Below, piece by piece: positions 372 through 62,737 of a DNA stretch of 64,000 nt. Made by a program: the position numbers and the translations under genes. Numbering within the stretch: the first letter of the stretch is position 1; each line of letters begins with the position of its first letter. The notes under the pieces were generated by a model, which had not been told where the DNA came from, did not search any database, and saw only the letters and a program-made list of their open reading frames with translations. The stretch lies in assembly GCF_006345805.1 (NCBI RefSeq), contig NC_043005.1, positions 87,792,001 to 87,856,000 on the forward strand, in the 5' to 3' direction. This DNA is from Octopus sinensis. Taxonomy: Eukaryota.

Positions 372-987
372 GGCGGCGAGCTGGTAGAAACGTTAGCACG
401 CCGGGCGAAATGCTTAAAGGTATTTCGTCTGCCGTTACGTTCTGAGTTCAAATTCTGCCGAGGTCGACTTTGCCTTTTATCCTTTCGGGGTCGATAAATT
501 AAGTACCAGTCGATTTAATCGACTTAATCCATTTGGGGTCGATTTAATCGACTTAATCCATTTGTCTGTCCTTGTTTCTCCCCTCTGTGGTTAGCCTCTT
601 GTGGGTAGTAAAGAAATAGGTATTTCGACTGCCGTTACGTTCTGAGTTCAAATTCCGCCGAGGTCGACTTTGCCTTTCATCCTTTCGGGGTCGATAAATG
701 AAGTACCATTTACGCATTGGGGTGGATATAATCGACTTAATCCGTCTGCTCGTCCTTGTTTGTATCCTCTGTGTTTAGCCCCTTGTGGGTAGTAAAGAAA
801 TAGGTATTTCGTCTGCAGTTACGTTCTGAATTTAAATTCCGCAGACGTCGAATTTGCCTTTCATATTTCGGGGTCGATTGAATAAGTACCAGTTACGCAC
901 TGGCGTCGATGTAATCGACTTAGTCCCTTTGTCGGTCCTTGTTTGTCCCCTCTAGGTTTAACCCCTTGTAGGCAATAAAGAAATAAA
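372..987 (+). mobile_element. tRNA-derived SINE (family S1, tail type 1): one full unit followed by two head-truncated tandem units
   Basis: A-box-like GAGCTGGTAGAAACG, B-box GAGTTCAAATTC, core CCTTTCGGGGTCGATAAATTAAGTACCAG and tail TGTGGGTAGTAAAGAAA. GGTATTTCG recurs at 419, 619 and 803. Many dispersed copies in the window. Confidence 0.9.
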
Positions 988-5230: not shown

Positions 5231-5263
5231 AGAATAAATCATCATCATCATTATTATTATTAT

Positions 5264-13707: not shown

Positions 13708-14095
13708 TATTTACTCGTCCGACTAAACGGGGGAGGGTACACAGTGGGGTATAATTGCAGGTGACGACCGTAGCTTCCAGAAGTCGTTACGCGGTCAAAC
13801 TCAAATGGCTGTGAGTCACAACAGCAGTTTTTTTTTTTTTGTATGAACATTTTGAATTATATCGTTCAGACATGGATGACATAGAAAACAGATATGCTGC
13901 CGGGCCATTCTGCCGGGTCATGGTCCGTTATGCAGAAATGGATACGTGAAACATCAACAGGGCACTTCTAAACTATGGATGAATGGGTTTCTTGTGCCTT
14001 TACCCTGCTGCACAGGATTGGTAACATGAAGTATCAACAGGACGCCGAGAAAATATCGTAATGTTCTCATTTCCTCTGCCAAATTGGACAAAAAA

Positions 14096-16885
14096 GTTTC
14101 CACCTACTATGATAGGAATTGTTTCTGTTTTTAGATTCCACATTCTCGTTACCTCTATTTCCAGGTCTTTGTATTTTGAAAGTTTCTCCATTTCTTTTAG
14201 AGACACGTTGTCATCTGCCGGTATTGATACATCAATTAGAAAGCATTTTTTTTCCTCAACTATATCTGGTCTGTTGGCCTTAATTTCTCTATCTGTGTGT
14301 ATCGGCATATCCCAGAGTATGGTTGCTTTCTCGTTTTCTGTGACCTTTTCTGGTGTGTGCATATACCATCTTTTTTCTGTTGTTATTCCATAATGTTGGC
14401 ATAGCTTCCAGTGTATATAGGTCCCACTCTGTCGTGCCCATGAATATATTCCTTCTTAACCAGGACTGGCCAGCCAGAGATAATATGATTTATTGTTTCT
14501 TGTCCATCTCCACATATTCTGCAGTTACTTGTAATATTTCTTTTCATTACATGTTTTTGGTAATTTCTGGTGGGGAGGCTTTGGTCTTGTGCTGCAATTA
14601 AAAATCCCTCTGTTTCTGCTTTGAGTCCTGAGCTTCTCAACCATTGCTGGGATTTTTCTTTGTCTATTTCTTTTGCGTTTAGTTTAGTCCAGTATTTACC
14701 ATGCTTTTCTTGCCATCGTTTTATCATGGCTCGTTGCTGTTCTATTTTTAGTTTGGATTTCATTTGCTTTATAGCTTTTGTTGTTTCTTCATCTTCTTCA
14801 TATTTATTAGGTGGTATGGTTTCTTGTTTGTATTTGTCAGCTTCCTTAAATACTGAGAACAGTTTTTTTGTTTTGCTCGTGTTTTGCCGCTATTTGTATC
14901 AGTTTTCCTTCCTTCTTTTGCAGTCCTATGTTGGTTATTTTATAGTAGTTTCCCAGCTGTATAAGGCCTCTACCATCTTCTATACGTTGTATATATAGTC
15001 TTTCTATGTCAGATTTTGGGTGATGCATCCTAGATCCTGTCATTATTTTTCTTGTTTTCCTATCTATTTTGGTCAGTTCATTTAGTGTCCAGTTAAGGAT
15101 ATTGTAGCTGTAACTTATAACTGGGACAGCTAAAGTGTTAATACCTATTATCTTGTTTTTTAGCATTGAGCTCTGTTTTTAATATTGATCTAACTCGTCT
15201 ATAATATTCTTCTTTATTTTCTCTTTCATTTGTGTGTGTTGTGTCTTATCTAGTTCATAAATTCCTAAGTATTTGTAAGTTTGGCTTTGGTCTAATTCTT
15301 TTATTTCATTGGTTTTATCTAGTGTGATGTTGCTTCTATTAACTAGTTTTCCTCTTTTCAGAGTTACTTTGGCGCATTTTTCTAATCCAAATTTCATATC
15401 TATTTCTTTGGTAAATCCACGAACTGTCTTTAATAGTGTTTCCAGCTCTTTGTCATTTGCAGCGTATAGTTTTAGGTCATCCATATATAAAAGGTGGCTG
15501 ATCGTTTTGCCGTAACATTTATATGCGCATCCAGTTCTATTTAGCATATCAGATAGAGGTGACAGTGCCAAGCAGAAAAGGAGTGGAGAGAGCGTGTCTC
15601 CCTGGAATATTCCTCTTCTAATGGGGATGTCTTTGGTTTTCATGAGTTCCTCTTTTGTTTGGAGCTTTAGCACTGTTTGCCATTTAGTCATAGAGTGCCC
15701 TATGAATTTTATAATTGTTGGTGCTACTTTGTTAATGGCTAGTGTTTCGAGGATCCATATGTGGGGGATGCTATCAAACGCCTTTTTGTAGTCGATCAAG
15801 GCCATACTGAGGCCTTTCTTCTTTCTGTGGCTGTCTTCAATTATGGCTTTATTAATCATTAGTTGATCTTTACAGCCATATGAGCCTTTGCGGCATCCTT
15901 TCTGCTCTTCTGGAAACAGGTTGTTTTCGTCCAGGTGCTTGTTCAACCTTTGCGATATCACTGCAGTAAATGCCTTGTATATTGTAGGGAGACAGGTTAT
16001 TGGTCTGTAGTTTTCTGGTTTTGCTGTCTCATTTGATTTAGGAATTAAGATGGTTTTCCCCTTCGTGAGCCATTCAGGCATTGTCTCTGGCTCTGCTAGT
16101 ATGTTGTTAAAGTTTGCAGCCAGCTTTTTGTGCATTCCTGTTAGATATTTCAACCAGAAGTTGGGGATCTTGTCATGCCCAGGTGCCTTCCAGTTGCTTA
16201 GTCTTTGCAATGCCTGGGTGACCTCTTCAGTTGTTATGGGGGTCCAAAGTTGCTCAGATGCTGAGTTTGTTGTTTTAATACTCCTTTTTTTGTTGTTCGT
16301 TCGCCGACCATATTTCTCTCCAGAATTCTTCCAATTCTTCTGCCGTTGGTGCTGCAGTGATTTCTATTTTATTTTTGCCAAGTTCTTGGTAGAACTTTTT
16401 GTTTTGTTCAAAGAAGCGCTGGCGTTTCTCGTACCGGCGGATCCTTTGTGCTTTGGCAAGGATATCTTGCTTCAGCTTTTCTTTTATCTCAGGTAATTCT
16501 TTTTCTGTGATGTTATATTTGCGGAGTATTCTTGTTTTCTTTTTGTTGCTTAGTAGCGTTGATTGTCTACTGATTTCTTTAAGAATCGACAGATCTTTTC
16601 TCATTTTTTGTATTTTGTATTGGATGTTATTTATCCACAAGGTTTGTTTGGGTGGTTGTACTCCTGTTTGGATGGGTTTGAGTTAGTATCCAGCTTCTTT
16701 TGTGGCTGCAGTGGCTGCTGCGTATACTAAGTCATTTAGCTCAGTGATATCGCTTTTTGTTTCAGTGGCTATTAGTTTCGTGACGGCTAGGTTTATGCTG
16801 TTTATAATTAGTGTTGTTGTTTCGTCTATTTTGATTTTTGGGAGGTATGGTCGGTGGTCCATTTTGAGCTCTATGGTTTTCTACA
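14096..16885 (-). mobile_element. R4/Dong-like RLE non-LTR retrotransposon, family A, truncated at both ends
   Basis: ORF pieces with RT motifs (YRPITCL, QKGC, DYKKAFDS, GIFQGD.LSP, YMDD), zinc knuckle CRICGDGQETINHIISG and RLE motif RPDIV...FLIDVS...EKLSKY; ends at PIIVG with no 3' UTR. Confidence 0.93.
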
Positions 16886-19856: not shown

Positions 19857-20891
19857 CTTATTTCTGTTAATTTTTATTTTAGCATTTCATTGTTTTGATT
19901 TATTGGTGAGCTGCTTCTTGCATACGTATGTTTTGAATATATCAACTAACTATATGCGTACATATACATGTGTGGGCATACATATACAAAATAGATATAG
20001 AGATGTATATATATATATATATATGTGGGGGGGTATGCATATGTACACATGTATATGTATGTGTGTGCGCACGCATGTATACATGAAGATAACATCGGTC
20101 AGTTGTCCATATATTGGTAAAAATATACATTCGAAATAGTTTCTTTTTTTGCGGGGGAGAAGTTATATTTTATGTAGGCAAGTAGTATAATGTTAGTTAT
20201 GGTCAGTCAGAAAGTTACTATCGGTTTCGTGTCTAATATAGCAACTCATGAAACCAGGTGCCCGGCGGCACGTAATTTTGTTACGAATAGAAATATAAAT
20301 AAAATCTTAGTTTGGTCGTGAAAAAAACCCTGAAAGGAAAGAAAAAAACATGTCCTAATATACCAATACTGAGAACGATAGCGTTACTTCTTTTTCAACG
20401 ATACCAAGTGTGTGAGAAATGGGTCGGTTATGTACGGGTTTCGTTCACTACTCTGCAGGCACGACACACCACTTTTCGAAAATGAATATCCTACCATACA
20501 GGCACAAACTTCTTGAATTCTATACAGTACTTTTTTAATCCGAAATAACACTGAATTATGAAGGGGTTAATAGTCTCCGTCCATCAGGCCTGATCGGGAC
20601 GTAGCGACAAGCTAAGCATTTCGTACGGCGTGCTAACGATTCTGTTACCGAATGATGAAAATGTTCGGTTTGTGATCATGATGTGCTTGGTTCGAACTCA
20701 CTTCGTGGTATCACTCATAAGTTACATTTTCTATAGCCTGGCGTAAACTCATAACTCGTGATTGAAATTCAGTGTACAGAAACTGTACGGAAGCCCGTCA
20801 GATGGATTTTTTTACGTTGTAGTTCAAAATATACGGACTGGTCGGCACACTCGGTGGCAGGTCGATTCTGTCTACGAATTGCATCAAATGT

Positions 20892-23627: not shown

Positions 23628-26247
23628 TAGTTCTATTTTTATAGCGTGCTTTCACTTCACTACCGAGCGCAGCTCTGTGTGCCTTGGGTATGTGCTGTGA
23701 TTTGTTGTGATGCTCTGATAGTTATTGTATGGAAAGTGTTCTGCGTAGGATGTGTGCAGTGCCTAGTAGTGCAATTTTCTGTATGTTATATGTGTTTGTA
23801 AGTCCTGGTGTTTTTGTTATGTATTTGTCTGAATCTTTTTTTATCATGCCTAATGCACCTACTATGATAGGAATTGTTTCTGTTTTCAGGTTCCACATTC
23901 TAGTTACCTCTATTTCCAGGTCTTTGTATTTTGAGAGTTTCTCCATTTCTTTTAGAGACACGTTGTCATCTGCCGGTATTTATACATCAATTAGAAAGCA
24001 TTTTTTTTTCTTTATGATCTCTGACAACTATATCTGGTTTGTTGGCCTTAATTTCTCTATCTGTGTGTATCGGCATATCCCAGAGTATGGTTGCTTTCTC
24101 GTTTTCTGTGACCTTTTCTGGTGTGTGCCTATACCATCTTTTTTCTGTTGTTATTCCATAATGTTGGCATAGCTTCCAATGTATGTAGGTTCCAACTCTG
24201 TCATGTCTGTGACTATATTCCTTCTTAGCCAGGACTGGGCAGCTAGAGATAATATGATTTATTGTTTCTTGTCCATCTCCACATATTCTGCAGTTACTTG
24301 TAATATTTCTTTTCATTACATGTTTTTGGTAATTTTGGTGGGGAGGCTTGGTCTTGTGCTGCAATTAAAAATCCCTCTGTTTCTGCTTTGAGTCCTGAGC
24401 TTTTCAACCATTGCTGGGATTTTTCTTTGTCTATTTCTTTTGCGTTTAGTTTAGTGCAGTATTTACCATGAAGGGGCTTTTCTTGCCATCGTTTTATCAT
24501 GGCTCGTTGCTGTTCTATTTTTAGTTTGGATTTCATTTGTTTTATAGCTTTTGTGTTTCTTCATCATCTTCTTCTTCTTCTTTGTGTTTATTAGGTGGTA
24601 TGATTTCTTGTTTGTATTTGTCAGCTTCCTTAAATACTGAGAACAGTTTTTTGTTTTGCTCGTGTTTTGCTGCTATCTGGATAGGTTTTCCTTCCTTCTG
24701 AAGTAGGTATTTTTGCAGTCCTATGGTGGTTATTTTATAGTAGTTTTCCAGCTGTATAAGTCCTCGACCACCTTCTATACGTTGTATATATAGTCTTTCT
24801 ATGTCAGATTTTGGGTGATGCATCCTAGATCCTGTCATTATTTTTCTTGTTTTCCTATCTATTTTGGACAGTTCATTTCGTGTCCAGTTAAGGATATTGT
24901 AGCTGTAACTTATAACTGGGACAGCTAAAGTGTTGATACCTATTATCTTGTTTTTAGCATTGAGCTCTGTTTTTAGTATTGATCTAACTCGTCTATAATA
25001 TTCTTTTTTATTTTCTCTTTCATTTGTGTGTGTTGTGTCTTATCTAGTTCATGGATTCCTAAGTATTTGTAAGTTTGGCTTTGGTCTAATTCTTTTATTT
25101 CATTGGTTTTATCTAGTGTGATGTTGTTACTCTTAACTAGTTTTCCTCTTTTCGTGGTTACTTTGGCGCATTTTTCTAATCCAAATTTCATATCTATTTC
25201 TTTGGTAAATCCACGAACTGTCTTTAATAGTGTTTCCAGCTGTTTGTCATTTGCAGCGTATAGTTTTAGGTCATCCATATATAAAAGGTGGCTGATCGTT
25301 TTGCCGTAACATTTATATCCGCATCCAGTTCTATTTAGCATATCAGATAGAGGTGACAGTGGCAAGCAGAAAAGGAGTGGAGAGAGCGCATCTCCCTGGA
25401 ATATTCCTCTTCTAATGGGGATATCTTTGGTTTTCATGAGTCCCTCTTTTGTTTGGAGGTGTAGGACTGTTTGCCATTTAGTCATAGAGTGCCCTATGAA
25501 TTTTATGATTGTTGGTGCTACTTTGTTAATGGCTAGTGTTTCGAGGGTCCATATGTGGGGGGTGCTATCAAACGCCTTTTTGTAGTCAATCCAGGCCATA
25601 CTGAGGCCTTTCTTCTTTCTGTGGCTGTCTTCAGTTACGGCTTTATTAATCATTAGTTGATCTTTACAGCCATATGAGCCTTTGCGGCATCCTTTCTGCT
25701 CTTCTGGGAACAGTTTGTTTTCGTCCAAGTGCTTGTTCAGCCTTTGCGATATCACTGCAGTAAATGCCTTGAACATAGTAGGGAGACAGGTTATTGGTCT
25801 GTAGTTTTCTGGTTTTGTTGTTTCATTTGATTTAGGAATTAAGATGGTTTTCCCCTTCGTGAGCCATTCAGGCATTGTCTCTGGCTCTGCTAGTATGCTG
25901 TTAAAGTTTTCAGCCAGCTTTTTGTGCATTCCTGTTAGATATTTCAACCAGAAGTTGGGGATCTTGTCATGCCCAGGTGCCTTCCAGTTGCTTAGTTTTT
26001 GCAGTGCCTGGGTGACCTCTTCAGTTGTTATGGGGGTCCAAAGTTGTTCAGATGCCGAGTTTGTTATTTTCATACTCCTTTTTTTTGGCTGTTCGATCGC
26101 CGATCATATTTCTCTCCAGAATTCTTCCAATTCTTCTGCCGTTGGTGCTGCAGTGACTTCTATTTTATTTTTGCCCAGTTCTTGGTAGAACTTTTTGGGG
26201 TCGGAGTTGAACTTTTTGTTCTGTTCAAAGAAGCGTTGGCGTTTCTT
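23628..26247 (-). mobile_element. R4/Dong-like RLE retrotransposon, family A, 5'-truncated with intact 3' end
   Basis: 366-aa RT ORF (24973-26073), CRICGDGQETINHIISSC knuckle, KPDIVVRD and IALLGTAHILRRTLSIQ* C-terminus, ~90-nt 3' UTR ending ...CTACTGAATAATAAT; 5' junction in (AAT)n(AAG)n. Confidence 0.95.
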
Positions 26248-26308
26248 CTTCTTCTTATTATTATTATTATTATTATTATTATGACTATTATCATTATTAT
26301 TATTATTA

Positions 26309-26358
<50 letters not shown>

Positions 26359-27162
26359 GTCATATCCATCGAGTTCGTCATCATCATTTTTATCGTCAAA
26401 TACAATAAGCATATAACTTGCATAACATCCATTACATCCATGTCCTACATCAGATTGGCTGCTCACCTTGAGGAACAATAAAACATCTGAGACTAGTTTT
26501 AAAGAACAGCTACAGGTAAACTACCAATTATTATTTACTTAAGTCCTTCGCCCTCAACGAAACGTAGGCCAGCGTCCTACTTTACTGTTCTCGGCATTAG
26601 GTTACTGTTATGTCCCTCCATTCCCAGATTTTATTGGTTTCAAATTCCTACCAATGTTTTTGTAATTATGCTTTCGCTTCGGCCCCAGAGAAACTCATTT
26701 TTACCTCTGCAAACAGATGGTCAATATTAAACTAGCTTCTATCCTTTTAATCTGTCCGGCGTGGGAAACTCTGTCAAGCGCTTGCACTCCGCTGGTATAG
26801 ACCTGAGAATCACTGAGGTGCAGAAGGAATCACACTGCATTGACGGTTGGACCTTTTGAACAACCTTTTTTGAAGAAGTCAGTAAAAGATGAAATCCATC
26901 GCTTACAAGATTTCCATCAGTGACAAAATGGATCTGAAATTAAACAACAATATTGGATACTGCAAACGGATTCTGTGGTTAAATTAACGCAAGATACTAG
27001 AAAATGTTTCAATGATGCCAATTCAACTTGGCAAAATCTATTGCGACGTAAAAAATTATGATCGGATACTTGACGAAAAATAACACCCTTTCGCCGTGAG
27101 TCTTCCTCAGGCATAAGATCAAGCAAGCAATACTGTTTGATATGCTCCGTACTGTGTTCGAG

Positions 27163-27353: not shown

Positions 27354-27525
27354 AGGTGGTGAGCTGGCAGAGTCGTTAGCACCCCGGAACAAATGCTTTG
27401 CGTCATTTCGTCCATCTCTGCGTTCTGATTTCAAATACCGCCGATAAAATATGTAACATTTGAACACTAGGGTCGATGTGATCGACTGATACCGACGCAG
27501 CCCCACTAAATTGCTGAAGGTCTAT
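27354..27525 (+). mobile_element. diverged S1 SINE
   Basis: GGTGGTGAGCTGGCAGAGTCGTTAGCACCCCGG...GGGTCGATGTGATCGACT...AAATTGCTG. Confidence 0.7.
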
Positions 27526-28088
27526 GTTCTGATCATATATTAAAATCTGGGGAAAAACGCTCCTATTTGAGATCAGGCTCAGCAACGTTTGAGTTTTTGT
27601 ATGAGAGTCAGTCTTGCGTCGTGGATGATGTCTTTGTTTCTGATGTCAGAATTTTGAATTTTATTTAGAAGCAACTCTAAAATGTAACGCTTATCGATAT
27701 CTCATAAGTGTGTGACATCGATTATGTCTGCATTTTCAGTTTCTTAATCATATATGTTCCACTGTGAAGTACTTTTGATTGTGATTTTACTGTTTTGCGT
27801 TTGCAACAATGTATACTTTCGGTGGTGCTGCCTAGTTGACTTCAATTTGTCGTGAATCTATTTGAAATCAACGTTCGAGATCTTTGATAAAATCCTATTA
27901 ATATGTTGTTTTTTATAATATCGATCAAATAAAAAATTATTTGACTCTAACAAATATTTTACATGTATTGACACAAACATATAAAAATTATATTTATTCA
28001 CGAAACGTTTCTTTCGTGACATTTTAAATAAGATTTTGTTTATCCAAAAGCCAATCTCAGGAGCAAAAGGTTATAGTCGTACAAACCG

Positions 28089-28140
<52 letters not shown>

Positions 28141-28141
<1 letters not shown>

Positions 28142-29090
28142 TCTTTACTGGCCACCAACGTCGAACACAAAACATGAAGGACGATACACAGACGAGGGGC
28201 AATGGGGTTAAACGTGTAAATAGCAAAAAACACAATTAACAAGGAGATTAAACCAACAATATACTTCCCTAATAAGGTGGAGGTTCACCAAGAGGTGACC
28301 AAAAAAATCTCACGCACTTTGGATCTGCTACGACCAAAGACACCTCAGGTACGCACCCCTATCCTTCTCATTCCATCCAGCCTACAGGCGCACAAATAGA
28401 GTAGGCCCATTCACACGTGCCATTCTTGCTACATTCACTCACCTTTCAAAAAGATTACTCGGTAACAGCACCTCACTCTCCAGCATCACTTTCCTTTTAA
28501 AGTGGAATCAACAGGGCCTTGGAAGAGGAGAAAGGTACCCTCTTCAACCCTATAAATCGCATCCACGACACAATCTCTTTCGCCATAGCCACCAGAGAGA
28601 GAAAAGCTGCCCGTCCTTCACGGCCAAAGGAAGGAAGTGGGGCGATCCTCACGATGGACGCGGACGATAGCGGCATCCGTCCTACATGTCACAATAACTA
28701 TTCGACAAAGCTCCACAAATAAGTAATGCCTGGACACTGTACGAGAGCATGCAGAACGGTTTCATTGCTCTGCGTGCATCTCGGACAAGCCCGTCTGACT
28801 GCACACCCGTGCCTGTACAGCTGATCACGAACTGGCAGAACCCTCCGGTAGCACTGCCAGGCCAGGGATTTCTGGAAGTTATCCATAGGCCTCGTTCCGA
28901 AAGTCTTCCGGAAGAGACCAGCAAGTTGATCCCTCTCGAAGCCCAGGACCTCTCCAAAACTATCGTTACTCTTGCCCTCCATTAATCCCATATAGAACTC
29001 CAAGGTGGTTTTTCCACTGACCGTATTGCCCGACAAACCGAGGGCTGTGAACGCTTGGGGACACTCTAGGTACCGAACGCCCTATCTCAG
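28141..29090 (-). mobile_element. Tx1/L1-clade LINE 3' fragment (subfamily T1) in an (AAT)n tract
   Basis: MDNFQKSLAWQCYRRVLPVRDQLYRHG...CPRCTQSNETVLHALVQC (zf-RVT-type C-terminal knuckle); tail ...GGCCAGTAAAGAAA; (AAT)n on both flanks. Confidence 0.8.
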
Positions 29091-29118
29091 TCTATAATAA
29101 TAATTATAATAATAATAA

Positions 29119-29209
<91 letters not shown>

Positions 29210-29735: not shown

Positions 29736-29755
29736 TGATGATGATGATGATATTT

Positions 29756-29786
<31 letters not shown>

Positions 29787-30347
29787 GATGATGACGATGA
29801 TGACGATGACGATGACGATGACGATGATGATGATGATGATTTCTCTTATTGGTCACAAGAGCCCAAAACAAAGAAACAACATCTAAGGACGAGATAGAGC
29901 AGAGGATATAGCAAAGGAAATATAAATACAAGTTAGAGAAATAAATAATTAATAAATATATAAATAGAATGCTCAAAAGAAGAGAAGTCCACTCAGGGGA
30001 ATTTGAGATAAACCCCACGCAAAAATTCCAGTTTACTCTGCCATCCTCAATGCATGGCTAAATGTCATCCTCCAGTTTCTTTCCTTCTGCTTAGAAAAGC
30101 CTACTCAGAGACAATCCATCCAGCCTCACCAGCATTGCTACAGTTGTTCACTTTTTGATAAGTACACTAGAAACCCGCACCACCCTCTCTATCTTTAAAT
30201 TCCTAATCAAATGATATTTGAAAAAAACATTGATGAAAGCTAATAATAATAGTTACACAGTATATGCTTTTCCTGTTACAATCTCTTCCTCTACCGCTCT
30301 CCCTCTCTCTCTCTCTCTCCTCTCTCTCTCTCCTCTCTCTCTCTCCA

Positions 30348-31100
30348 GCAGACAAAACAATGAACGAAATTTTAAGCTCATACAAAATTATAAAAAGAAG
30401 AAAGCAACTGAAATCACTGAAAAAAATATTAACCAGCGCAAGACTATATGCACTAACAACAGAGCCAAAAGCGAAAAATGTGGACGTGCTAACTTCTGGA
30501 GGGTTCAGAATTTCACTTCAAACAAGGAGTAATATTTAAGATCAAATCAAATTTCACCTGCGCCTCAGAAAATCTAATCTATGTCATGACATGCATAGGA
30601 TGTGGTAAACGCTATATTGGACAAACGGGAATTTCACTCTGTCAAAGAACCACCAATCACAAGGAGCAAATCCGCCACCCACAATACAGACAGTTAAAGG
30701 TGAGTGAACACATAGAAAGGTATGCCAGGAATCTTAATCCCAATTTCCAAATCTTCCCCTTCTATCAATGTTCACAGAACACCACAATACAACAAAGGTT
30801 GAATAAAGAGGCATTTTTCATCCAAAAATATCTCCCCCAACAAAATATGGATACACAACTCAATACAGAACACCACGAACCCTTCAATTTAAACCACTAA
30901 CCCCTTTACACTCCCTACACCATTCACATTGCCTTATCCAGAATTATTTACCTCCCTTACAAATAATCCAGAACTATTTACCTCCCTTAGAAATAATATT
31001 TTTTCTCAGGATCTATTAGACCTGACGCCGTGTATTAGCCGGTGTTTTCAAAGCGATGAATAGTTTCTTGCTGAAACCATGGTTCGCTTTGTTCTCTTTC
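30348..31100 (+). mobile_element. Penelope-like element 3' part: GIY-YIG endonuclease relic and 3' region
   Basis: KCGRAN...FTCASENLIYVMTCIGCGKRYIGQTGISLCQRTTNHKEQIR...RLNKEAFFIQK (frameshifted); Cys-rich linker before the GIY-YIG; 5'-truncated at (CT)n. Confidence 0.88.
31049..31091 (+). ncRNA. degenerate hammerhead-like motif downstream of the PLE ORF
   Basis: Stem I CAAAGCG/CGCTTTG, core ATGAATA, GAAAC-CATG-GT-T with palindrome ACCATGGT; stem II does not pair. Confidence 0.3.
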
Positions 31101-33987: not shown

Positions 33988-34539
33988 GTGTGCGTGTGTG
34001 TGCGTAAAGAGAAGGAGATAGAGGGAGAGACAGAAATAGATAGACAGACAGGTAAAAGGATAGATGGATACATAGATCTTGATGCATGTGTTCGAGACAC
34101 GGACGTGTGAATTTATGATTTTTTATATCTGTTTAACACCGGTAAAATATGTTGTGTGTTTTGGAGGGTGTAACGTTCTATATATTGCCAGCGTTTCTTT
34201 ATATGGACATAGAAATAGGGTTGGTGAAATTGAATCATGGGAAAGCAGAAGCAGGAAAAGAAACAGTGAACTGGAGAGGAAGTAGAGATCTAAGTATATA
34301 TCTATATAGATTTTTACGTTGTTAGAAAGAGAGGGGGGAAAGGGAGAGAAAGAGAAAGAAAGAGTGAGGAAGAGAAACAGAGAGAGGGAGTGAGCGAGGG
34401 GTAGAGAAACTCAGGCAGATAGAGAGAGAGATATATAGAGAGACAGAGAGATAGATAGATAGATTATACATACATACATACATACATACATACATACATA
34501 GAAAGATAGGTAGACAGATAGATAGATAGATAGATAGAC

Positions 34540-34692
<153 letters not shown>

Positions 34693-35928
34693 TGTTTCTT
34701 TATTAGCCACACAGGGCTGCACACAGATAGAACAAATTACAAGGTAGAGCTTTTCTTTTGAAGGTTTAAAAAAAAAAATAAAAAATAAAAAAAAAAAAAA
34801 ATAAAAAATAAGAAAAAAAAAATAAAATAAAATAAAATAAAATAAAAAGGGGGGGGTCGATCAAAAGGGATCGTAAAAGGAGAAAAAGGACAAAAAAAAA
34901 AAAAAAAAGGGGGGTTAAAAAAAAAGGGGGAGAGGAAAAAATTGATCAATAGGGATCGTTATCACAGAAATGTCAATATGAATGTAAAGGGGGGACAGGT
35001 GAGGTTTACCCGTGGAAAGAAAAGCCTACGGAAAAGACCACGGTAACCTCGGTCAATGAAGTCACATGTTATATTTCTTTTTTTTTTTTTTTTTTTTTTT
35101 TGCAAATAAGCAACTCTCTGTATTATTTTTACGGTTCATAGAATCATAGTCAAGGTGGCTTCGTCATTCATACGTGCCATCCTTGCTACATTCACCCATC
35201 TTTTTTTAAAACATTCACTAGACAAACTTGCCTCTCTACTCTCACTTTTTTCTTAAGTGATACTTGAAGAAGTTGATGAGAGATTGACCAGAGAGGAAAG
35301 TTTGTCTCTAATCCTTTCAGACGCGTCCACCATACATTCTTTCGCCATAGCCACAAGTATGATAAAAATAGCTCTTCCTTCCCGTTTGAAGGAAGGAGGC
35401 GTGACGATATTACGATAGACTCGGCTGATAAACCGACACGTCCCACACGTGACAGCAGTCGTTCGACATAAGCCCACAGGTGGGAAATTGCTGGACACTG
35501 CACGATTGCGTGCAGAGCGGTTTCGTCGCTCTGCCCGCATCTCGGGCAGGTCGGCCCCGTGTTTCTCGAGCCATGCCTATAGAGCTTATCCCGAACGGGT
35601 AGCGCTTCTCGGTAGCACCGCCAGGCCAGGGATCTCTGGAAGTTGTCCATGGGTCCCGGGCCGAAAGTCGTTTGAAACAGGCGGGTCAGGTATTCCTCGT
35701 CGACGCCCAGGTTTGCCCCGAGCTCGTCGTCGTACCTCCCCTCCACTAATCCCCTATAGAATGCTTTGGTTGTGTTGAAGTCACTCAAGGTCGACCCGGG
35801 ACGGCAGAGTTGCTTGAGAGCAACGCGACACTCGCGGTGCCCACGCCCTTCTTCGGCCTCTTTTTGATCCACGACTGTAGTTCGGTCATGGAGACGAGTT
35901 GCGGGAATGCGTGCCTCACAAACGGCGA
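34693..35928 (-). mobile_element. Tx1/L1-clade LINE 3' fragment (subfamily T2) in a (GATA)/(GACA)n tract
   Basis: 226-aa ORF with CPRCGQSDETALHAIVQC, continuing after frameshifts to KRWVNVARMARMNDEATLTMIL*; long 3' UTR ending GGCTAATAAAGAAA; (GATA)n left, degenerate (GACA)n right. Confidence 0.85.
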
Positions 35929-36567
35929 CAGACAGAAGGACGGACAGACAGACGGATAGTCAGACAGACAGATAGTCAGAGAGGGGAAAGGAAAGAGGCG
36001 AAGGATAAAATAATCCCAAAATAAGTGACAGAATGGAAAGAGCATGTAAATGTATTAGACTGTTGGGAAGCAAATAACAACCTCAAATAGATAGAAATAA
36101 ATAGAAGAGTACAAGAGGAGAAGAAATGGTAAAATAAAAGAGAGCAGAGGGGGAGGAGACAGAGAGAAGAAAGATGAAGAATGAATAAATATAAAAAGAT
36201 CAGAGTATCAAGTTGATAACAATCAGCAATTACTTCTTTCATTTCATCATTTTTTTTGTCTCTTTGAAAAAAAGATTATATAACAAAGAATAGCAAAAGC
36301 AGTTTATATACTCATATATATATATGTGTGTGTGTATGTGTGTGTGTAAGTGTGTGATTTTGTACATTTATATATATATATGTGCGTGTGTATGTGTGTG
36401 TGTGTATGTATGTATGTATGTATGTATGTATGTATGTATGTATGCATATAAGCACACATATATATATGTATATACACATATCTCTCTGTATAATATATAT
36501 ACATATATATATATATACATATATATATATTTACATTTATATATATATATATAATATATTATATATA

Positions 36568-48478: not shown

Positions 48479-48707
48479 GACGGCGAGCTGCTGGAATCGT
48501 TAGCACGCCGGGCGAAATGCTTAGCGGTGTTTCGTCTGCCGTTACGTCTGGGTTCCAATTCCGATGAGGTCGACTTTGCCTTTCATACTTTCAGAGTCGA
48601 TTAAATAAGTACCAGTTACGCACTGGGGTCGATGTAATTAATTTAATCCCTTTGTCTGTCCTTGTTTGTCCCCTCTATGTTTAGCCTCTTATTGGCAATA
48701 AAGAAAA
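48479..48707 (+). mobile_element. full-length S1 SINE (tail type 1) with ~14-bp TSD
   Basis: AATAAGATCGGAAG (48465-48478) and AATAAGATCGAAAG (48708-48721) flank the copy. Confidence 0.9.
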
Positions 48708-49310
48708 AATAAGATCGAAAGTAGTGCAACATATCATTAAGGAATTTTAAAAATTAGAAATTTAAAGCAAGATGGGGTTATATAATGAACACCTAGTAAG
48801 GGGTTGGAGGAAATAGCAGATCGAGATCAGGAAGGGCAATGATAGGGAATAGTCTAATGATTAACTATGGAATGTTAAACGAGTGATGATGATATCAACA
48901 TTGGATGGTAGAAACATTTTCGTGTGAATCAGGTGAAGCAACCCAAGATGATAAGTCGCGGGTGCGGGGTTGGGATAATGTATTCTATCAAGTCTATCAC
49001 GAGCGCTGCCCGCAAAACTGTATGTTGGTGTCAGCAGTATATAAGTAGTAGAAAATGGAAACGAACTGTCTCGGGTGTGCTACTAGGAGTTAAGTATCAC
49101 TGTCATCGTTATTGCATAATACCGGGCACACCACAGATAGAATGGTTAATTCTTCCTTCAATATAGCATAGCATAGAAGTATAATAAGAGCGTTTAAAAG
49201 GTAAAGGTAATGGGGAAATTAGTCTGGGAGGGCTCAGAAACGAATGGGTAGATCGATAGGCTGAGAGTCAGTGAGAGAGGGAGTAAATTGGATCGAACCT
49301 AGGTTGTATG

Positions 49311-49355: not shown

Positions 49356-49378
49356 AAATGCATGCATCCACATTACCT

Positions 49379-49605
49379 ATTTCTTTATTATCCACAAGGG
49401 GCTAAACACAGAAGGGACCAACAAGGACAGACATAGGTATTAAGTCGATTACATCGACCCCAGTGCGTAACTGGTACTTAATTTATCGATCCCGAAAGGA
49501 TGAAAGGCAAAGTCGACCTCGGCGGAATTTGAACGCACAACGTAACGGCAGACAAAATACCGCTAAGCATTTCGCCGGGCGTGCTAACGTTTCTGCCAGC
49601 TCTCC
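49379..49605 (-). mobile_element. full-length S1 SINE (tail type 1)
   Basis: Reverse complement of S1 from GGAGAGCTGGCAGAAACG to GATAATAAAGAAA. Confidence 0.9.
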
Positions 49606-50134
49606 AGCTCTCCGCCATCAGTGGTGTTATGCAGGAAATGCAAACACATAGAAAAGCACCAACTACGCAAATGGCAAATAAAACTTCTACCTAACTATCC
49701 TCTGATATATACACAGATTCATAATAATGCTTTACATTAGCTATTCTTTTCCAATCATTTCTCTTTCAGTCTTTCCTTTACTCCATATTTTTAGTTTTAG
49801 TTTTTTCTGCGTAAGACAAACTTTATATCGTTCTGCTTATATAATTCCCCGCGTCGTGGTTGGTTAATATACCTTAATAATATTGAATTCTTTTGCTTTT
49901 CCCTTAACTTCAAGCAATTACGTCATTTGTTTTCAAATGTTTCAATGTCGTAATTAATGGAAAATTCTCCACACTTTCTGAAAATGATTTATTCACCTGG
50001 AAGCAAGCGGCAGTTTAAGACGCTCACATACACGCATGCACGCACACACAAACACACATATACACACATAAACACGAACACACAAATATGTAAGCACAGA
50101 CATATAAATATATATAGGCGTATATATATGTATT

Positions 50135-52669: not shown

Positions 52670-55600
52670 CTAACAGATCCCGTCTTTTTCCCTTTCTTTT
52701 CGTTTCCTTCTCCGTATTTTATTCTCATTATTTCGAACTAATACAGACACAGTAAGCCTTGAAGAAGGAAGAGGAGGAAAGAAAAAAAAAATGTCGTCCG
52801 GAGATAAAACTATCAACAAAAAAATACAGACGAATATAGATCTGCTAGTCTTAAGAAGCGGCGCTATGAGCAATGCTTACATGTAGTGAACCCTAAACTG
52901 ACAGATCCATCTCCTAATATAAGAATGAATGCTCGTCATGCTTCAAGGTCAACAAATCAAACAATAAACCGCATTGGTCATTGCGCGGATTACAAAAGAC
53001 CACGTACCCGAAAATTGAACCAAATCCTGATTGAAAAATCAGTTACTGGATCAAATCTTCCCAACACACAGGAGCTGGACGAACCCCACAACCGGAATAT
53101 TCCAACAGATGGCCATCCATGCTCATCACCAAATAATCAAAAGAAAAAGAAGGAAAAATGGTCTAGGGAAGATAATAAAGAAGTTCTTGAGGCCTTCTAC
53201 CATGCCATATATTTCCCCACAGATAAGTCTAGCACTGTACAAGCATACTTAAACTGGAGACAGAAACACCCTGAAGTAAGACCCTACATAGACAGTAACA
53301 AGCTTGCCAATGTTAGAAGAAACATTATAAAAAAGAAATTACTGACTGAAGTAGAGATTGATCAGGTTAGACAAGCAATATCGGATAAAATGAACGAAGC
53401 TGCAGCTAGAGAAGATAATACAGAGGAAATGATTATAGACCAGCCCAGGGCGGATAAAAACGAAGAGAGGATTCAAAGAGTTAGTATAAGTGATAGGCAA
53501 AGTGAAATACGCCCTGAACCAATCATAAACACTAAGACAGATGAGCAAATATTGACCCAACAGAACTACATGAGCTAAAAAATCAAATCATGATTGAATG
53601 GCTGAAAATTAAAGAAACCAGCATGGATGAGCGTGATACACTTCCTAAAATCCGCAACTCTAACCAAAACATGAAAATAATTGGTAAAATCCGGCTTGCA
53701 CTTAAGGATATAATTTCAGTTAATGATGTTGATATCACAAACCTCAACCACTTATACTATGCATCCGCGAAAATCTCAACGATCCTATGTGGTGTAAAGA
53801 TTAGAAAACGGCAACAGTCCCACAAAAAGCCTTCTTGGCAAGAGCGTCTGCAACAACAAATTAAAGTATTTAGATCTGACATTAAATATTTGAAAAACCT
53901 TAAGGCTCACAAGACTACCAAACCTACAAAAACCCAAAAATTACTGAAAAAATACAATATGAAAACTATACTTGATATTGATGCCACCATAGAAACCATC
54001 AAACAAAAGGTATCTGCCAAAGCTGCCCGCATAGCGAGGTATGAAAAGCGTGTTAGATTTTTCAAGGACAACAACATGTTCAAAAATAACACCAAGAATT
54101 TTTACAGGAAGATAGGAAAAACAGCGTTTACTGCAGGGTCTGTACCATCAAAAGAAGAAGTGCAGAGATTTTGGAATAAAATCTGGGCAGAAGAAAAAAC
54201 ACACACAACGAAAAGGCCCCCTGGATTGACAGAATATCTACAGAACTGGCCCCTTAGAAGAGCAAAAGTGGGAGGGTGTCAAGGTAGAAGATATAAGATC
54301 TGCTCTCAGGAGGTCAAGCAAATGGAAGTCTCCAGGAAAGGATAAAATTCCTAACTTCTGGCTGAATGCCTTCCCAGAGAGCCATGAACTGCTAACAGAA
54401 CTGTACAATGATTTTGCAACACCCTAGTAGGATGCCTCCTTGGCTAGTTAATGGGTTAACATTCCTGCTTCCAAAAAGTGAAGAAACAAATGAACCAAAA
54501 AACTATAGACCCATAACCTGCTTAACAACTATGTACAAAACTAACATCTGTCCTGACGGAATATACCTATAGTTTTTTAACAGACAGCAGCATATTCCCT
54601 AATGAACAGAAAGGATGTAAACGTGGATCCTACGGCTGTAAAGACCAACTACTCATCAATAAGATGATCTTAGAAGATTGTCACAAACGACACAAAAACT
54701 TATCAATAGCCTGGATAGACTATAAAAAGGCTTTTGATAGCCTACCACATAGCTGGATTAGGAAATGCCTTGAAATGTATAAGATAGCACCACTCTGCGA
54801 AACTTCTTGACTGTAAGTATGAGATCATGGAGAACCACACTAACTCTGAACAGTGACAGTGAATCCCTAAATGCTGGTGATGTAAAAATTTCGTGTGGCA
54901 TTTTCCAGGGTGACTCACTGTCACCACTCCTCTTTTGTTTCCTTAATACCTCTCTCAAAGCTGCTCAATGACGCGCAGTACGGGTATAAAATGTTTGATA
55001 AAAATATAAATCATCTCGTTTACATGGATGATTTAAAGCTTTTTGCAAAAAATGATCAACAACTCAAGGGCTTACTAGCGATAGTCAAACAATTCAGTGA
55101 CGACATCAGAATGCAATTCGGCCTCGATAAATGTGCAAAGGCTACCTTTATCAAAGGAAAAATGACAGAAACATCTAACGTTAACCTTGACCAACAGAAT
55201 GTCATAAAAGAACTAGACCCAGCGGAGAGCTACAAGTACCTAGGGGTAATTGAAGGGAACGGAATAAGGCATTCAGAGATGAAGGAAAGGATCAGGAGAG
55301 AATGCTATCGAAGAGTGAGAGCAATACTCAAGACAGAGCTGAATGCAAGAAACAGGATCGAAGCAATCAATGCATTAGCTATACCAGTCGTGACTTACAG
55401 TTTCAATATTGTTAACTGGTCAATTACTGAAATATGTCAGCTCGACAGAAAAATAAGGAAACTGTTAACAATATATAGAATGCACCACCCTAAGGCAGAT
55501 ACAGAACGACTCTATCTGCCAAGAAAAGAGGGAGGCCGTGGTCTTTTGCAACTGGCAATAACAATGAAGATTGCTACAATTGGCCTAGACACCTACCTGA

Positions 55601-57511: not shown

Positions 57512-57690
57512 AATGGTTTCAAATTTTGCGACAAGGGCAGCAATTTTGGGGGATTAGATGAGTCGAATACATTACCCCCCAGTGTTCAACTGGTAATTAT
57601 TTTTATCGACACCGAAAGGATGAAAGACGAAGTCGACCTCGGCGGAATTTGAACTCAGAATGCAGCAACGGCCGTAACACCGCTAAAGCA
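57512..57690 (-). mobile_element. S1 SINE, tail type 2, inside a (GAT)n array
   Basis: Reverse complement ...CCCCCAAAATTGCTGCCCTTGTCGCAAAATTTGAAACCATTATT. Confidence 0.8.
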
Positions 57691-59178: not shown

Positions 59179-59344
59179 GAGCTAACGATCCCATGATCGT
59201 CAGCACGCCTGGAAAAATAGCGGTATTTCGTCCGTATTTATGTTCTGGGGTCGATAGATTAAGTACCAGTTACGCACTGGGGTCGATGTAATCGACTAAT
59301 CCCCTACCCCGAAATTGCTGCTTTTGTATCAAAATTTGAAACCT
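59179..59344 (+). mobile_element. S1 SINE, tail type 2, internally deleted
   Basis: GTCAGCACGCC...GGTATTTCGTCCG...TTCTG|GGGTCGAT...CCCGAAATTGCTGCTTTTGTATCAAAATTTGAAACC. Confidence 0.75.
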
Positions 59345-62430: not shown

Positions 62431-62479
62431 GCCAAACTTTGGTTGAAACATATAACACTAGCAAAATTAAATATATATA

Positions 62480-62692
62480 TTTCTTTACTGCCCACAAGGG
62501 GTTAAACATAGAGGGGATAAACAAAGACAAAGGAATTACAATGACCCCAGTTGCAAAACTGGTACTTTATTTATCGACCCCGAAGGATGAAAGGCAAAGT
62601 CGACCTCGGCAGAATTTGAACTCAGAACATAACGACAAACGAAATACCGCTAAACATTTCGCCCGGCGCGCTAACGTTTCTGCCTGCTCGCC
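62480..62692 (-). mobile_element. S1 SINE (tail type 1)
   Basis: Reverse complement GGCGAGCAGGCAGAAACGTTAGCGCGCCGGGCG...GTGGGCAGTAAAGAAA. Confidence 0.88.
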
Positions 62693-62737
62693 ATAAATAT
62701 AAATATATTATATATATTATATATATATATATATATA

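What the first reader, a model, noticed from the sequence alone, without database searches (positions are those of the whole stretch)
34693..34750. S1 SINE tail matches the 3' end of a Tx1/L1-clade LINE
Seen (manual alignment): LINE CCTTG-TAA-TTTGTTCTA-TCTGTGT-GC-AGCCC-TG-TGTGG-C-TAATAAAGAAA versus SINE (49379 copy) CCTTG-TTGGTCCCT-TCTGTGT-TT-AGCCC-CT-TGTGG-A-TAATAAAGAAA, 38 of 47 identical with one 3-nt gap. Both can form a small hairpin (AGCC/GGCT in the LINE, GCCC/GGGC in type-1 SINE tails) before AATAAAGAAA. Established: shared 3' tails mark stringent LINE-SINE pairs, typical of L2, CR1 and RTE and less often reported for L1/Tx1. Inference: this abundant octopus SINE is mobilised by a Tx1-like LINE.
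Basis: partly seen in the sequence, partly recalled or inferred. Interest (0 to 1): 0.75.

Follow-up and report, generated by a model that had tools for sequence, protein, structure and literature searches.

The report
Octopus SINE borrows L1-type LINE tail
A very abundant short repeat (SINE) in this cephalopod genome ends in the same ~50-base tail, with a small conserved hairpin, as an L1/Tx1-type LINE, which marks that LINE as the element that most likely copies the SINE; this is a well-known kind of partnership, here identified for the octopus SINE.

Summary
The last about 50 nt of a 5'-truncated LINE copy (minus strand, tail 34750-34693) match the 3' end of the window's type-1 SINE: 38/47 to the cited copy and 39/47 to the SINE consensus. 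Both alignments end at the elements' 3' ends, and 0 of 2000 shuffles score as well.

The tail is not a stray SINE fragment.
- Two more copies of the same LINE in the window carry the motif.
- So do relatives from Argonauta hians and other assemblies, at 48-68% protein identity.
- An Argonauta copy matches the octopus SINE better (44/52).
- No SINE body accompanies the tail in any LINE.

A near-full-length Argonauta relative has ORF1, an APE endonuclease, an RT and a zf-RVT domain. Its best solved-structure match is human L1 ORF2p, so the LINE belongs to the L1 superfamily. I could not test Tx1 versus L1.

A 4-bp stem with a CTTGT loop upstream of AATAAAGAAA shows modest covariation.

Two of the three window LINE copies sit between matching microsatellites, as some Tx1 elements do.

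Trans-mobilisation of type-1 SINEs by this LINE is the likely reading but is inferred. Type-2 SINE tails differ.

This is a new member of a known kind, of moderate interest.

The parts
34693..34750 (-). 3' tail of LINE copy A, shared with the type-1 SINE: CCTTGTAATTTGTTCTATCTGTGTGC-AGCC-CTGTGT-GGCT-AATAAAGAAACA (hairpin AGCC/GGCT)
   Evidence: 39/47 to SINE consensus; 0/2000 shuffles
34751..35135 (-). 3'UTR of LINE copy A, inflated by poly-T and poly-A low-complexity runs; colinear with the 3'UTR of relative L001
35136..35928 (-). C-terminal fragment of LINE ORF2 (copy A): zf-RVT CCHC domain. It has at least two frameshifts (~35845, ~35200); the stop by homology is at 35138-35136; it is 5'-truncated at ~35920
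34417..34692 (.). (AGAT)69, read as (TATC)n in the element's sense, directly after the tail of copy A
35927..35980 (.). Degenerate (GACA/GATA)13 repeat directly 5' of truncated copy A, the same repeat type as at its 3' side
28139..29093 (-). LINE copy B: ORF2 C-terminus (52% identical to Argonauta ORF2, E 4e-56), 3'UTR and decayed tail ...TGTATCGTCCTTCATGTTTTGTGTTCGACGTTGGTGGCCAGTAAAGAAAGT
28090..28138 (.). (AAT)16 directly 3' of copy B, read as (ATT)n in the element's sense
29094..29181 (.). (AAT/ATA)29 directly 5' of copy B, so copy B is bracketed by the same microsatellite
29841..30240 (-). LINE copy C: the last ~45 ORF2 codons, 3'UTR and tail ...GTTTTGGGCTCTTGTGACCAATAAGAGAAATC, followed by (ATC)n at 29736-29840
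375..985 (+). Three type-1 SINE units head to tail (375-622 full length; 619-802 and 803-985 both start at the same internal position), each ending ...CCCCTTGTGGGTAGTAAAGAAATA
48482..48708 (+). Type-1 SINE copy with a target-site duplication AAATAAGATCG
49378..49606 (-).
62478..62693 (-). Type-1 SINE copy

Best explanation
The window comes from an octopod-like cephalopod genome. It holds three dead, 5'-truncated copies of one non-LTR retrotransposon family of the L1 superfamily (the L1/Tx1 group). The family's architecture, read from a near-full-length Argonauta relative, is ORF1 with a CCHC knuckle, then ORF2 with an APE endonuclease, RT and a zf-RVT zinc domain.

The family's 3'UTR ends in a conserved module of about 50-60 nt. 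It consists of a T/C-rich box (TCTGTGTT), a 4-bp stem with a CTTGT loop (N1N2CC-CTTGT-GGN2'N1'), and AATAAAGAAAT. A short tandem repeat such as (ATT)n, (ATC)n or (TATC)n usually follows.

The abundant type-1 SINE of the window, which by eye has a tRNA-like head with a B box and a CORE-like middle, carries the same module as its 3' end.

Inferred mechanism, by analogy with stringent LINE-SINE pairs: the LINE's ORF2 protein recognises this 3' stem-loop and terminal sequence on RNA to start target-primed reverse transcription. SINE RNA carrying the same tail is recognised in trans and copied into new sites, leaving target-site duplications of about 8-16 bp.

What is shown: the tail homology, its terminal position, its presence and co-variation across diverged LINE lineages and several SINE families, and the L1-type domain architecture. 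What is inferred: RNA recognition by ORF2p and actual trans-mobilisation.
For: Tail identity.
- 38/47 to the cited copy by block count.
- 39/47 to the SINE consensus, z about 9.5, 0/2000 shuffles, terminal in both elements.
- blastn of the SINE finds nothing else outside SINE copies in the window that matches its tail.

The tail is integral to the LINE.
- Copies B and C in the window carry it.
- So do Argonauta L002-1 (44/52 to the octopus SINE, 0/2000), L002-2 (37/43, 0/2000), L004 (24/2000), L006 (6/2000) and L003.
- Used as a blastn query, the Argonauta LINE 3'UTR picks the octopus SINE tails as its best window hits (E 2e-6).
- The L001 3'UTR is colinear with copy A into the tail.

Hairpin.
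- 83% of cells pair, against 74.9 +/- 2.6 in shuffles (1/500) and 10-48% in slid registers.
- One stem position shows G-C (10), C-G (5) and A-U (2).
- The stem appears in every minimum-free-energy fold.

LINE class.
- zf-RVT in the window ORF.
- APE, RVT_1 and zf-RVT in the Argonauta relative.
- Human L1 ORF2p is the best solved-structure hit for both halves, while R2 scores far lower.
- The other LINE family in the window is only 24% identical in the RT, and no match to the SINE tail was found near its 3' ends.

Several Argonauta SINE families, including a short one whose head gives a sub-threshold tRNA match, end in GCCCTTGTGGCTAATAGAGAAATC.

The extent and identity of the homology meet the criteria used for bivalve SINE-LINE partnerships: 35-61 bp at 72-95% (PMC11481361).

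L1-Tx1 LINEs are reported as recently active in O. vulgaris (PMC13282606).
Against: - No experiment shows that the LINE moves the SINE.
- The in-window LINE copies are dead. Copy A matches the SINE less well than an Argonauta copy does, and the decayed copies B and C give no significant alignment. The actual octopus master LINE was therefore not seen.
- The stem is only 4 bp, fold energies are no better than shuffles (z -1.6 to +0.3), and copy A and L004 form the stem in a shifted register.
- The covariation counts include related sequences: all five C-G cells are octopus SINEs.
- LINE copies sit in or next to microsatellites, while the SINE copies examined have ordinary target-site duplications in AT-rich DNA, so integration behaviour is not obviously identical.
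- About half of the SINE copies in the window carry other tails.
- ARAGORN and Rfam do not call the octopus SINE head a tRNA.
Confidence: 0.8

Rival explanations
1. The tail at the LINE end is a piece of a SINE that inserted at, or recombined with, this one LINE copy. On this reading the similarity says nothing about the LINE family.
For: The window's copy A is a single decayed fragment, and its 3'UTR is interrupted by low-complexity runs. SINEs are very dense in these genomes.
Against: Seven or more LINE copies carry the tail motif at the end of their own 3'UTRs. They come from the window, from Argonauta hians and from other assemblies, and span subfamilies 48-68% identical in protein. No SINE body sequence lies upstream of the tail in any of them. 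L001 is colinear from unique UTR into the tail. Stem bases differ between LINE lineages in a compensatory way.
Confidence: 0.03
2. The resemblance is chance or convergence between two AT-rich 3' ends that both need an AATAAA-like signal.
For: Eleven of the 38 identities lie in TAATAAAGAAA, and the window is 65% A+T. The hairpin is small and not thermodynamically exceptional.
Against: 0/2000 dinucleotide shuffles reach the score for copy A, L002-1 or L002-2. The match is terminal in both partners every time. Identity extends through TCTGTGT and the stem-loop, well beyond AATAAA. An Argonauta LINE picks octopus SINE tails as its best window hits by blastn.
Confidence: 0.02
3. The tail is a shared module, but this LINE family is not (or is no longer) the enzyme source. 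Either the SINE is driven by another LINE clade that carries the same or a closer tail, or the LINE took the tail from the SINE, and the link is only historical.
For: The best match to the octopus SINE is an Argonauta LINE copy rather than an in-window one. All window LINE copies are truncated and decayed. SINE tails are exchanged in a mosaic way in other molluscs (PMC11481361). RTE, CR1 and Dong-R4 LINEs are also recently active in O. vulgaris.
Against: No match to the SINE tail was found near the 3' ends of the other LINE family in the window. The tail is conserved with the L1-type LINE across octopod lineages, alongside several SINE families, which is what a lasting functional link predicts. 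L1-Tx1 families are recently active in O. vulgaris.
Confidence: 0.12

Closest known systems
Stringent LINE-SINE pairs with a common 3' tail, e.g. eel UnaL2/UnaSINE1 and zebrafish ZfL2 (L2 clade; Kajikawa and Okada 2002, cited in PMC4494074; Hayashi et al. 2014, PMC4176376)
   Same: About 50 nt of 3'-terminal homology between LINE and SINE. A small conserved stem-loop lies just upstream of the terminus. Short tandem repeats follow the LINE end. The SINE is built from a Pol III-type head plus a LINE-derived tail.
   Different: The LINE here is of the L1 superfamily, not L2. The stem is only 4 bp. No binding or retrotransposition data exist.
Maize and sorghum L1-clade LINE1-1_ZM with ZmSINE2/ZmSINE3 (Ohshima 2012, PMC3472496; review PMC3747384)
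   Same: An L1-clade LINE lineage with a conserved structured 3' end that SINEs share. It shows that L1-type elements can be of the stringent type.
   Different: That is a plant lineage, while this is an animal (cephalopod) lineage. Here there is no poly(A), the ends are microsatellites, and the element may belong to the Tx1 branch.
Tx1-clade LINEs and their SINE clients: Kibi and Koshi and crocodilian Tx1 families inserted in (TC)n, (TTC)n and (TTCC)n; Tx1-Mar with SINEU (Kojima 2015, PMC4494074)
   Same: An animal LINE of the L1/Tx1 group. Copies are flanked on both sides by one microsatellite type (copy B by (ATT)n, copy A by CTAT/CTGT repeats). A SINE family is attributed to it.
   Different: The SINEU-Tx1-Mar link rests on shared targets and shared 5' heads, not on a shared 3' tail. 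Here the link is the 3' tail. Membership of the Tx1 clade was not tested here. The microsatellite types differ.
CORE-SINEs, including octopus OR1/OR2 (Ohshima and Okada 1994; cited in PMC4758252 and PMC4824008), and MIR with L2
   Same: A tRNA-type head, a conserved central domain and a LINE-derived tail. The octopus SINE's middle resembles the CORE domain; this rests on reading by eye and on memory.
   Different: Known CORE-SINE partners are L2, L3/CR1 and RTE (Table 1 of PMC3747384), and CR1 in bivalves (PMC11481361). An L1/Tx1-type tail on a CORE-SINE is not in those lists. I did not verify identity with OR1/OR2.

Membership tests
LINE-SINE pair sharing a 3' tail (stringent-type partnership) | Homology confined to the 3' ends of both elements and significantly above chance | tested here: met
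   39/47 (copy A) and 44/52 (Argonauta L002-1) to the SINE consensus. The alignments end within 2 nt of both termini. 0/2000 shuffles reach the score; see also blastn.
LINE-SINE pair sharing a 3' tail (stringent-type partnership) | The tail is an integral, conserved part of the LINE family's 3'UTR | tested here: met
   Present in the 3 window copies and in 5 copies from Argonauta and other assemblies. L001 shows UTR-to-tail colinearity.
LINE-SINE pair sharing a 3' tail (stringent-type partnership) | Conserved 3' stem-loop serving as the recognition element | tested here: inconclusive
   A 4-bp stem with a CTTGT loop. 83% of cells pair against 75% in shuffles (1/500), with G-C, C-G and A-U at one stem position. 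Fold energies are no better than shuffles, and two LINE copies use a shifted register.
LINE-SINE pair sharing a 3' tail (stringent-type partnership) | The SINE has a Pol III (tRNA-derived) head and target-site duplications | tested here: inconclusive
   A B-box-like GAGTTCAAATTCC is seen by eye. ARAGORN and Rfam do not call a tRNA in the octopus SINE. The short Argonauta SINE gives tRNA at 21.8 bits, below the 29-bit threshold. A target-site duplication AAATAAGATCG is seen for copy 48482.
LINE-SINE pair sharing a 3' tail (stringent-type partnership) | Trans-mobilisation of the SINE by the LINE's proteins | not testable with these tools
   This needs a retrotransposition assay.
L1 superfamily (L1/Tx1 group) non-LTR retrotransposon | ORF2 with an N-terminal APE endonuclease, an RT, and a C-terminal CCHC zinc domain | tested here: met
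   The window ORF has zf-RVT at E 5.6e-8. The Argonauta relative has Exo_endo_phos (5e-11), RVT_1 (2e-18) and zf-RVT (6e-8). The window copies themselves are truncated and keep only the C-terminus.
L1 superfamily (L1/Tx1 group) non-LTR retrotransposon | RT and EN closest to L1-type ORF2 proteins | tested here: met
   The best PDB matches are human L1 ORF2p: RT E about 5e-22, and EN through linker residues 5-525 at E about 1e-12. R2 proteins score 1e-13 or worse. The PDB holds no CR1, L2 or RTE proteins, so this ranking is coarse.
Tx1 clade specifically | RT domain groups with Tx1 references in a phylogeny | not tested
The only support is indirect. Octopus repeat annotations list L1-Tx1 as the only L1-type LINE class among those they name.
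Tx1 clade specifically | Target-specific insertion, e.g. into microsatellites | tested here: inconclusive
   Copy B is bracketed by (AAT)n on both sides, and copy A by AGAT/GACA repeats on both sides. Copy C has (ATT)3 at its 5' side and (ATC)n at its 3' side. With only three copies, tail-seeded microsatellites are not excluded.
CORE-SINE superfamily (octopus OR1/OR2) | Presence of the ~60-bp CORE central domain | not tested
   The resemblance of TTTGCCTTTCATCCTTTCGGGGTCGATAAATTAAGTACCAG to the MIR core is judged from memory only. The literature annotates octopus SINEs as tRNA-Core or tRNA-Deu.

The most novel reading that the evidence does not exclude
One L1/Tx1-group LINE lineage combines stringent recognition of a 3' stem-loop with integration into microsatellites, or into tails, that match its own 3' end. 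It has lent its tail to several unrelated SINE families across octopods: a CORE-type SINE in this genome, and short tRNA-SINEs and CORE-type SINEs in Argonauta. That would make it the engine behind the octopod-specific SINE expansion (about 8-12% of octopus genomes) and behind the head-to-tail SINE/LINE trains seen here.
Probability: 0.4. Interest if true: 0.6.

Novelty: new member of a known kind. Interest (0 to 1): 0.45.

Why it matters
SINEs are the largest repeat class in Octopus genomes: 11.6% of O. vulgaris (PMC13282606), with the main SINE classes annotated as tRNA-Core and tRNA-Deu (PMC8967140). The papers I could search do not name the autonomous partner. The 2026 O. vulgaris annotation leaves 893 recently active SINE families unclassified. 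The 2013 table of 58 SINE-LINE pairs has no octopus entry. Bivalve SINE partners are CR1, CR1-Zenon, L2 and Nimb only.

Pinning the type-1 SINE to an L1/Tx1-type LINE has three uses:
- It names the enzyme source behind the octopod SINE expansion.
- It adds an animal example of a stringent L1-group LINE.
- It provides a small hairpin plus AAUAAAGAAA element that mutagenesis can test directly.

Tried and rejected
Searches that found nothing.
- I looked for more LINE copies with the search for related loci in the metagenome, prokaryote-genome and viral collections. All three found nothing.
- Protein P0011 was not on record.
- L005, L007 and L012 end before the tail.
- L008-L011 are one locus seen in four runs. 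Its LINE ORF ends prematurely. The downstream sequence ends in AACCCTTGTGGTTTGAATAAA at the contig end. I used it only as an extra tail example.

Tx1 versus L1. I hoped for named Tx1 or L1 proteins among the homologues, but the hit lists carried almost no names. The subclade stays unresolved.

SINE head. ARAGORN found no tRNA in the window or in the Argonauta loci. Rfam on the octopus SINE region returned only microsatellite artefacts (miRNA families far below threshold).

Hairpin energy. Fold energies of the tails are not better than shuffles, so I rest the hairpin on conservation and covariation, not on energy.

Other candidates.
- A match between copy C's UTR and the SINE B-box region (19/22, 37/2000 shuffles) looks like chance and I dropped it.
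- I considered the other LINE family in the window as an alternative partner. It has a CCHC...RHD motif that I recall from R2/R4-type elements, so it is probably Dong/R4-like. Its RT is 24% identical to this LINE's, and no match to the SINE tail was found near its 3' ends.

Literature. The Albertin 2015 paper is not held, and SINEBase has no held supplements.
Full report
WHAT IS AT THE COORDINATES

The feature lies on the minus strand. Read 5'->3' on that strand, 34750-34693 is CCTTGTAATTTGTTCTATCTGTGTGCAGCCCTGTGTGGCTAATAAAGAAACA. An (AGAT)69 array at 34417-34692 follows it directly, reading as (TATC)n in the element's sense.

Upstream on the same strand lies a 3'UTR of about 440 nt, swollen by poly-T and poly-A runs. 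Upstream of that lies an open frame whose product hits Pfam zf-RVT (PF13966, E 5.6e-8).

tblastn with a full-length relative shows that only the last ~250 codons of ORF2 are present (35928-35201). There are frameshifts near 35845 and 35200, and the stop by homology is at 35138-35136. Copy A is therefore a dead, 5'-truncated LINE fragment.

The window has six SINE copies with this type-1 tail: 375-622, 619-802, 803-985, 48482-48708, 49378-49606 and 62478-62693. Their consensus tail is GTCCTTGTTTGTCCCCTCTGTGTTTAGCCCCTTGTGGGTAATAAAGAAATA.

Against the last 300 nt of copy A the consensus aligns at 39/47. The score is 45, against 19.3 +/- 2.7 (maximum 33) in 2000 dinucleotide shuffles. The alignment ends at SINE position 226 of 228 and LINE position 298 of 300.

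blastn of the SINE against the whole window finds SINE copies. The only other hits are the LINE tail (E 1.5e-4) and one short match to the SINE head region at 20644..20611.

THE TAIL BELONGS TO THE LINE FAMILY

This was the main risk, and it is settled by independent copies.

(a) Copies in the window. tblastn with the Argonauta ORF2 finds two further copies on the same strand.
- Copy B is 29093-28388 plus UTR (E 4e-56).
- Copy C starts at 30240-30103.
- Both end in recognisable, decayed versions of the motif...GTTCGACGTTGGTGGCCAGTAAAGAAAGT followed by (ATT)n, and ...TTTTGGGCTCTTGTGACCAATAAGAGAAATC followed by (ATC)n.

(b) Relatives found through the protein, with their DNA.
- Argonauta hians L002-1 ends ...GTCCCCTCTATGTTTTTGCCCTTGTGGCTAATAAAAGAAATA followed by (ATT)4.
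- A second fragment in the same locus, L002-2, ends ...TTTGGACCCTTGTGGTCAATAAAAGA followed by (ATT)n.
- A second Argonauta subfamily, L004, ends ...TCTGTGTCAGCCAGGTGGCTAAGAAAGAAAT.
- The metagenome contig L006 ends ...CCGGGCCCTTGTGGCCAATAAAAGAAATC followed by (ATT)n.
- L003 ends ...CCTCTTGTGGCCAAT....
- These elements are 48-68% identical to copy A in protein.

(c) The Argonauta LINE tail matches the octopus SINE better than copy A does: 44/52, score 54 against 19.0 +/- 2.7, 0/2000 shuffles. L002-2 gives 37/43 (0/2000), L006 gives 6/2000 and L004 gives 24/2000. Used as a blastn query, the Argonauta 3'UTR picks the octopus SINE tails as its top window hits.

(d) The closest relative, L001 (68% protein identity), is colinear with copy A from LINE-specific UTR blocks into the first ~25 nt of the shared region. 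Its contig ends there.

(e) No SINE body sequence precedes the tail in any LINE copy.

The decayed copies B and C and contig L003 do not reach significance on their own.

WHAT KIND OF LINE

Locus L002 of Argonauta holds a nearly complete element.
- ORF1 is 639 aa with a CHRCGLPGHIRSGC knuckle and no Pfam hit.
- ORF2 is broken once.
- Its first half has Exo_endo_phos (5e-11).
- Its second half has RVT_1 (2e-18) and zf-RVT (6e-8).

Both halves find human L1 ORF2p as the best solved structure. The RT matches at E about 5e-22. EN through linker residues 5-525 match at E about 1e-12. R2 proteins score much lower. This is the architecture of the L1 superfamily.

I could not separate Tx1 from L1 proper. 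The homology searches returned almost no named proteins, and I had no reference set.

Two indirect pointers favour Tx1.
- Octopus repeat annotations list L1-Tx1 as the only L1-type LINE class among those they name, with 13 recently active families in O. vulgaris (PMC13282606 and PMC8967140).
- The insertion contexts described below resemble those of some Tx1 elements.

HAIRPIN

All the tails share the pattern N1N2CC-CTTGT-GGN2'N1' just before AATAAAGAAA. The stems seen are:
- AGCC/GGCT in copy A and L004 (shifted register or different loop);
- GCC/GGC in L002-1;
- GACC/GGTC in L002-2;
- GGCC/GGCC in L006;
- GGCC/GGCU in the Argonauta SINEs;
- GCCC/GGGU in the octopus SINE;
- AACC/GGTT in the L008 tail.

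On a 22-sequence alignment the counts are as follows.
- 83% of cells pair, against 74.9 +/- 2.6 in shuffles (1/500).
- Registers slid by 1-3 columns give 10-48%.
- The second stem position shows G-C in 10 sequences, C-G in 5 and A-U in 2.

This is modest support. The helix is only 4 bp, the sequences are related, and the five C-G cells are all octopus SINEs.

The stem appears in every minimum-free-energy fold. It is usually extended by pairing of the TCTGTGTT box with AAUA(A/G)AGA. The energies are not better than shuffles (z -1.6 to +0.3).

HOW IT MOST LIKELY WORKS

By analogy with the stringent LINE-SINE pairs (UnaL2/UnaSINE1 and ZfL2, PMC4176376; maize L1-clade LINE1-1_ZM with ZmSINE2/3, PMC3472496 and PMC3747384), the steps would be these.
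- The LINE's ORF2p recognises the 3' stem-loop and terminal A-rich box of its own RNA and primes reverse transcription at a nicked target.
- SINE transcripts carrying the same tail are accepted in trans.

The following is shown:
- the shared, terminal, conserved tail;
- the L1-type protein set;
- coexistence in one genome;
- classic target-site duplications on SINE copies (AAATAAGATCG for copy 48482).

RNA recognition and mobilisation themselves are inferred.

The homology meets the working criteria used for mollusc SINE-LINE partnerships: 35-61 bp at 72-95% identity, at the SINE tail and within the LINE 3'UTR (PMC11481361).

- Copy B is bracketed by the same microsatellite: (AAT)16 at 28090-28138 and (AAT)29 at 29094-29181.
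- Copy A has (AGAT)69 on its 3' side and a degenerate (GACA/GATA)13 directly at its truncated 5' end.
- Copy C has (ATT)3 at its 5' side and (ATC)35 at its 3' side.

This looks like integration into microsatellites that match the element's own 3' repeat. That behaviour is described for the Tx1-clade Kibi and Koshi elements and for crocodilian Tx1 families (PMC4494074). With three copies it remains a lead.

In Argonauta, SINE tails are often followed within a dozen bases by the head of the next SINE. One locus reads LINE fragment, (ATT)n, SINE, SINE, SINE, full-length LINE, all head to tail. The window has a three-unit SINE array at 375-985.

LIMITS

- SINE copies at 57517-57691, 59247, 6092 and 27354 carry a different tail (...AAATTGCTGCCCTTGTCGCAAAATTTGAAACC). 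Copy 5070 carries yet another. The partnership therefore covers only the type-1 subfamily.
- The octopus master LINE was not seen.
- ARAGORN and Rfam do not call the octopus SINE head a tRNA. The short Argonauta SINE gives a sub-threshold tRNA hit.
- The CORE-like middle is judged from memory.
- The source species is not established. Cephalopod origin is inferred from the nearest named relatives, Argonauta hians and Acanthosepion pharaonis.

NOVELTY AND VERDICT

LINE-SINE pairs with common tails are textbook. L1-clade examples exist in plants. A Tx1-SINE link (SINEU with Tx1-Mar) has been proposed from shared targets and heads.

In the searchable literature I found no statement of the partner of the octopus SINEs. 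I could not check Repbase notes.

The finding is a well-supported new member of a known kind. It is useful for octopus genome biology and moderately interesting to specialists.

Noticed in passing
window 28090-29181 (copy B), 34417-35980 (copy A), 29736-30250 (copy C): The truncated LINE copies sit inside microsatellites of one type. Copy B lies between (AAT)16 and (AAT)29. Copy A lies between (AGAT)69 and a degenerate (GACA/GATA)13. Copy C has (ATT)3 at its 5' side and (ATC)35 at its 3' side. This suggests integration into repeats that match the element's own 3' repeat, as in microsatellite-specific Tx1 elements, or else microsatellites seeded by the tail.
   Followed up: partly
window 375-985 (+): Three SINE units lie head to tail. 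Units 2 and 3 both begin at the same internal position (GGTATTTCG...), right after the AAGAAATA end of the previous unit. The string AAGAAATAGGTA also follows the tail of the unrelated copy at 49378. Unit identities (85-93%) are barely above those of random SINE pairs.
   Followed up: partly
L002 2700-9200 and elsewhere in L002 and L004 (Argonauta hians): There are head-to-tail trains in one orientation: LINE 3' fragment, (ATT)n, three ~157-bp tRNA-like SINEs, then a near-full-length LINE. Roughly 7 of 22 SINE tails in L002 are followed within about 12 nt by another SINE (my count by eye), far more than the SINE density predicts. This may reflect insertion next to existing tails, or local duplication.
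   Followed up: partly
window 57517-57691 (-), 59247-59335 (+), 6092-6290 (+), 27354-27540 (+), 5070-5250 (+): SINE copies with the same body carry different 3' tails. Type 2 ends ...AAATTGCTGCCCTTGTCGCAAAATTTGAAACC. Copy 5070 ends ...TGTAGAATAAATC followed by (ATC)n(ATT)n(AGT)n. The SINE family is a mosaic and probably has at least one other LINE partner, which I did not identify.
   Followed up: no
window 14003-16700 (-), 23990-26520 (-), 52808-56250 (+): Three copies of another non-LTR retrotransposon have a C-terminal CCHC...RHD motif of the R2/R4 type, so the element is probably Dong/R4-like. Its RT is only 24% identical to the L1-type LINE's, and no match to the SINE tail was found near its 3' ends.
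   Followed up: partly
window 30493-30897 (+): An open frame reading ...VMTCIGCGKRYIGQTG...NHKEQIR... looks like a GIY-YIG nuclease domain and may be a fragment of a Penelope-like element. It was not analysed.
   Followed up: no
L008-L011 (Logan runs SRR11869384, SRR11869390, SRR11869391, SRR11869394): The same ~1-kb locus was recovered from four runs. It has a truncated LINE C-terminus, followed by unrelated sequence that ends in ...TTTAACCCTTGTGGTTTGAATAAA at the contig end. This is the tail motif with an AACC/GGTT stem. The species is unknown.
   Followed up: no
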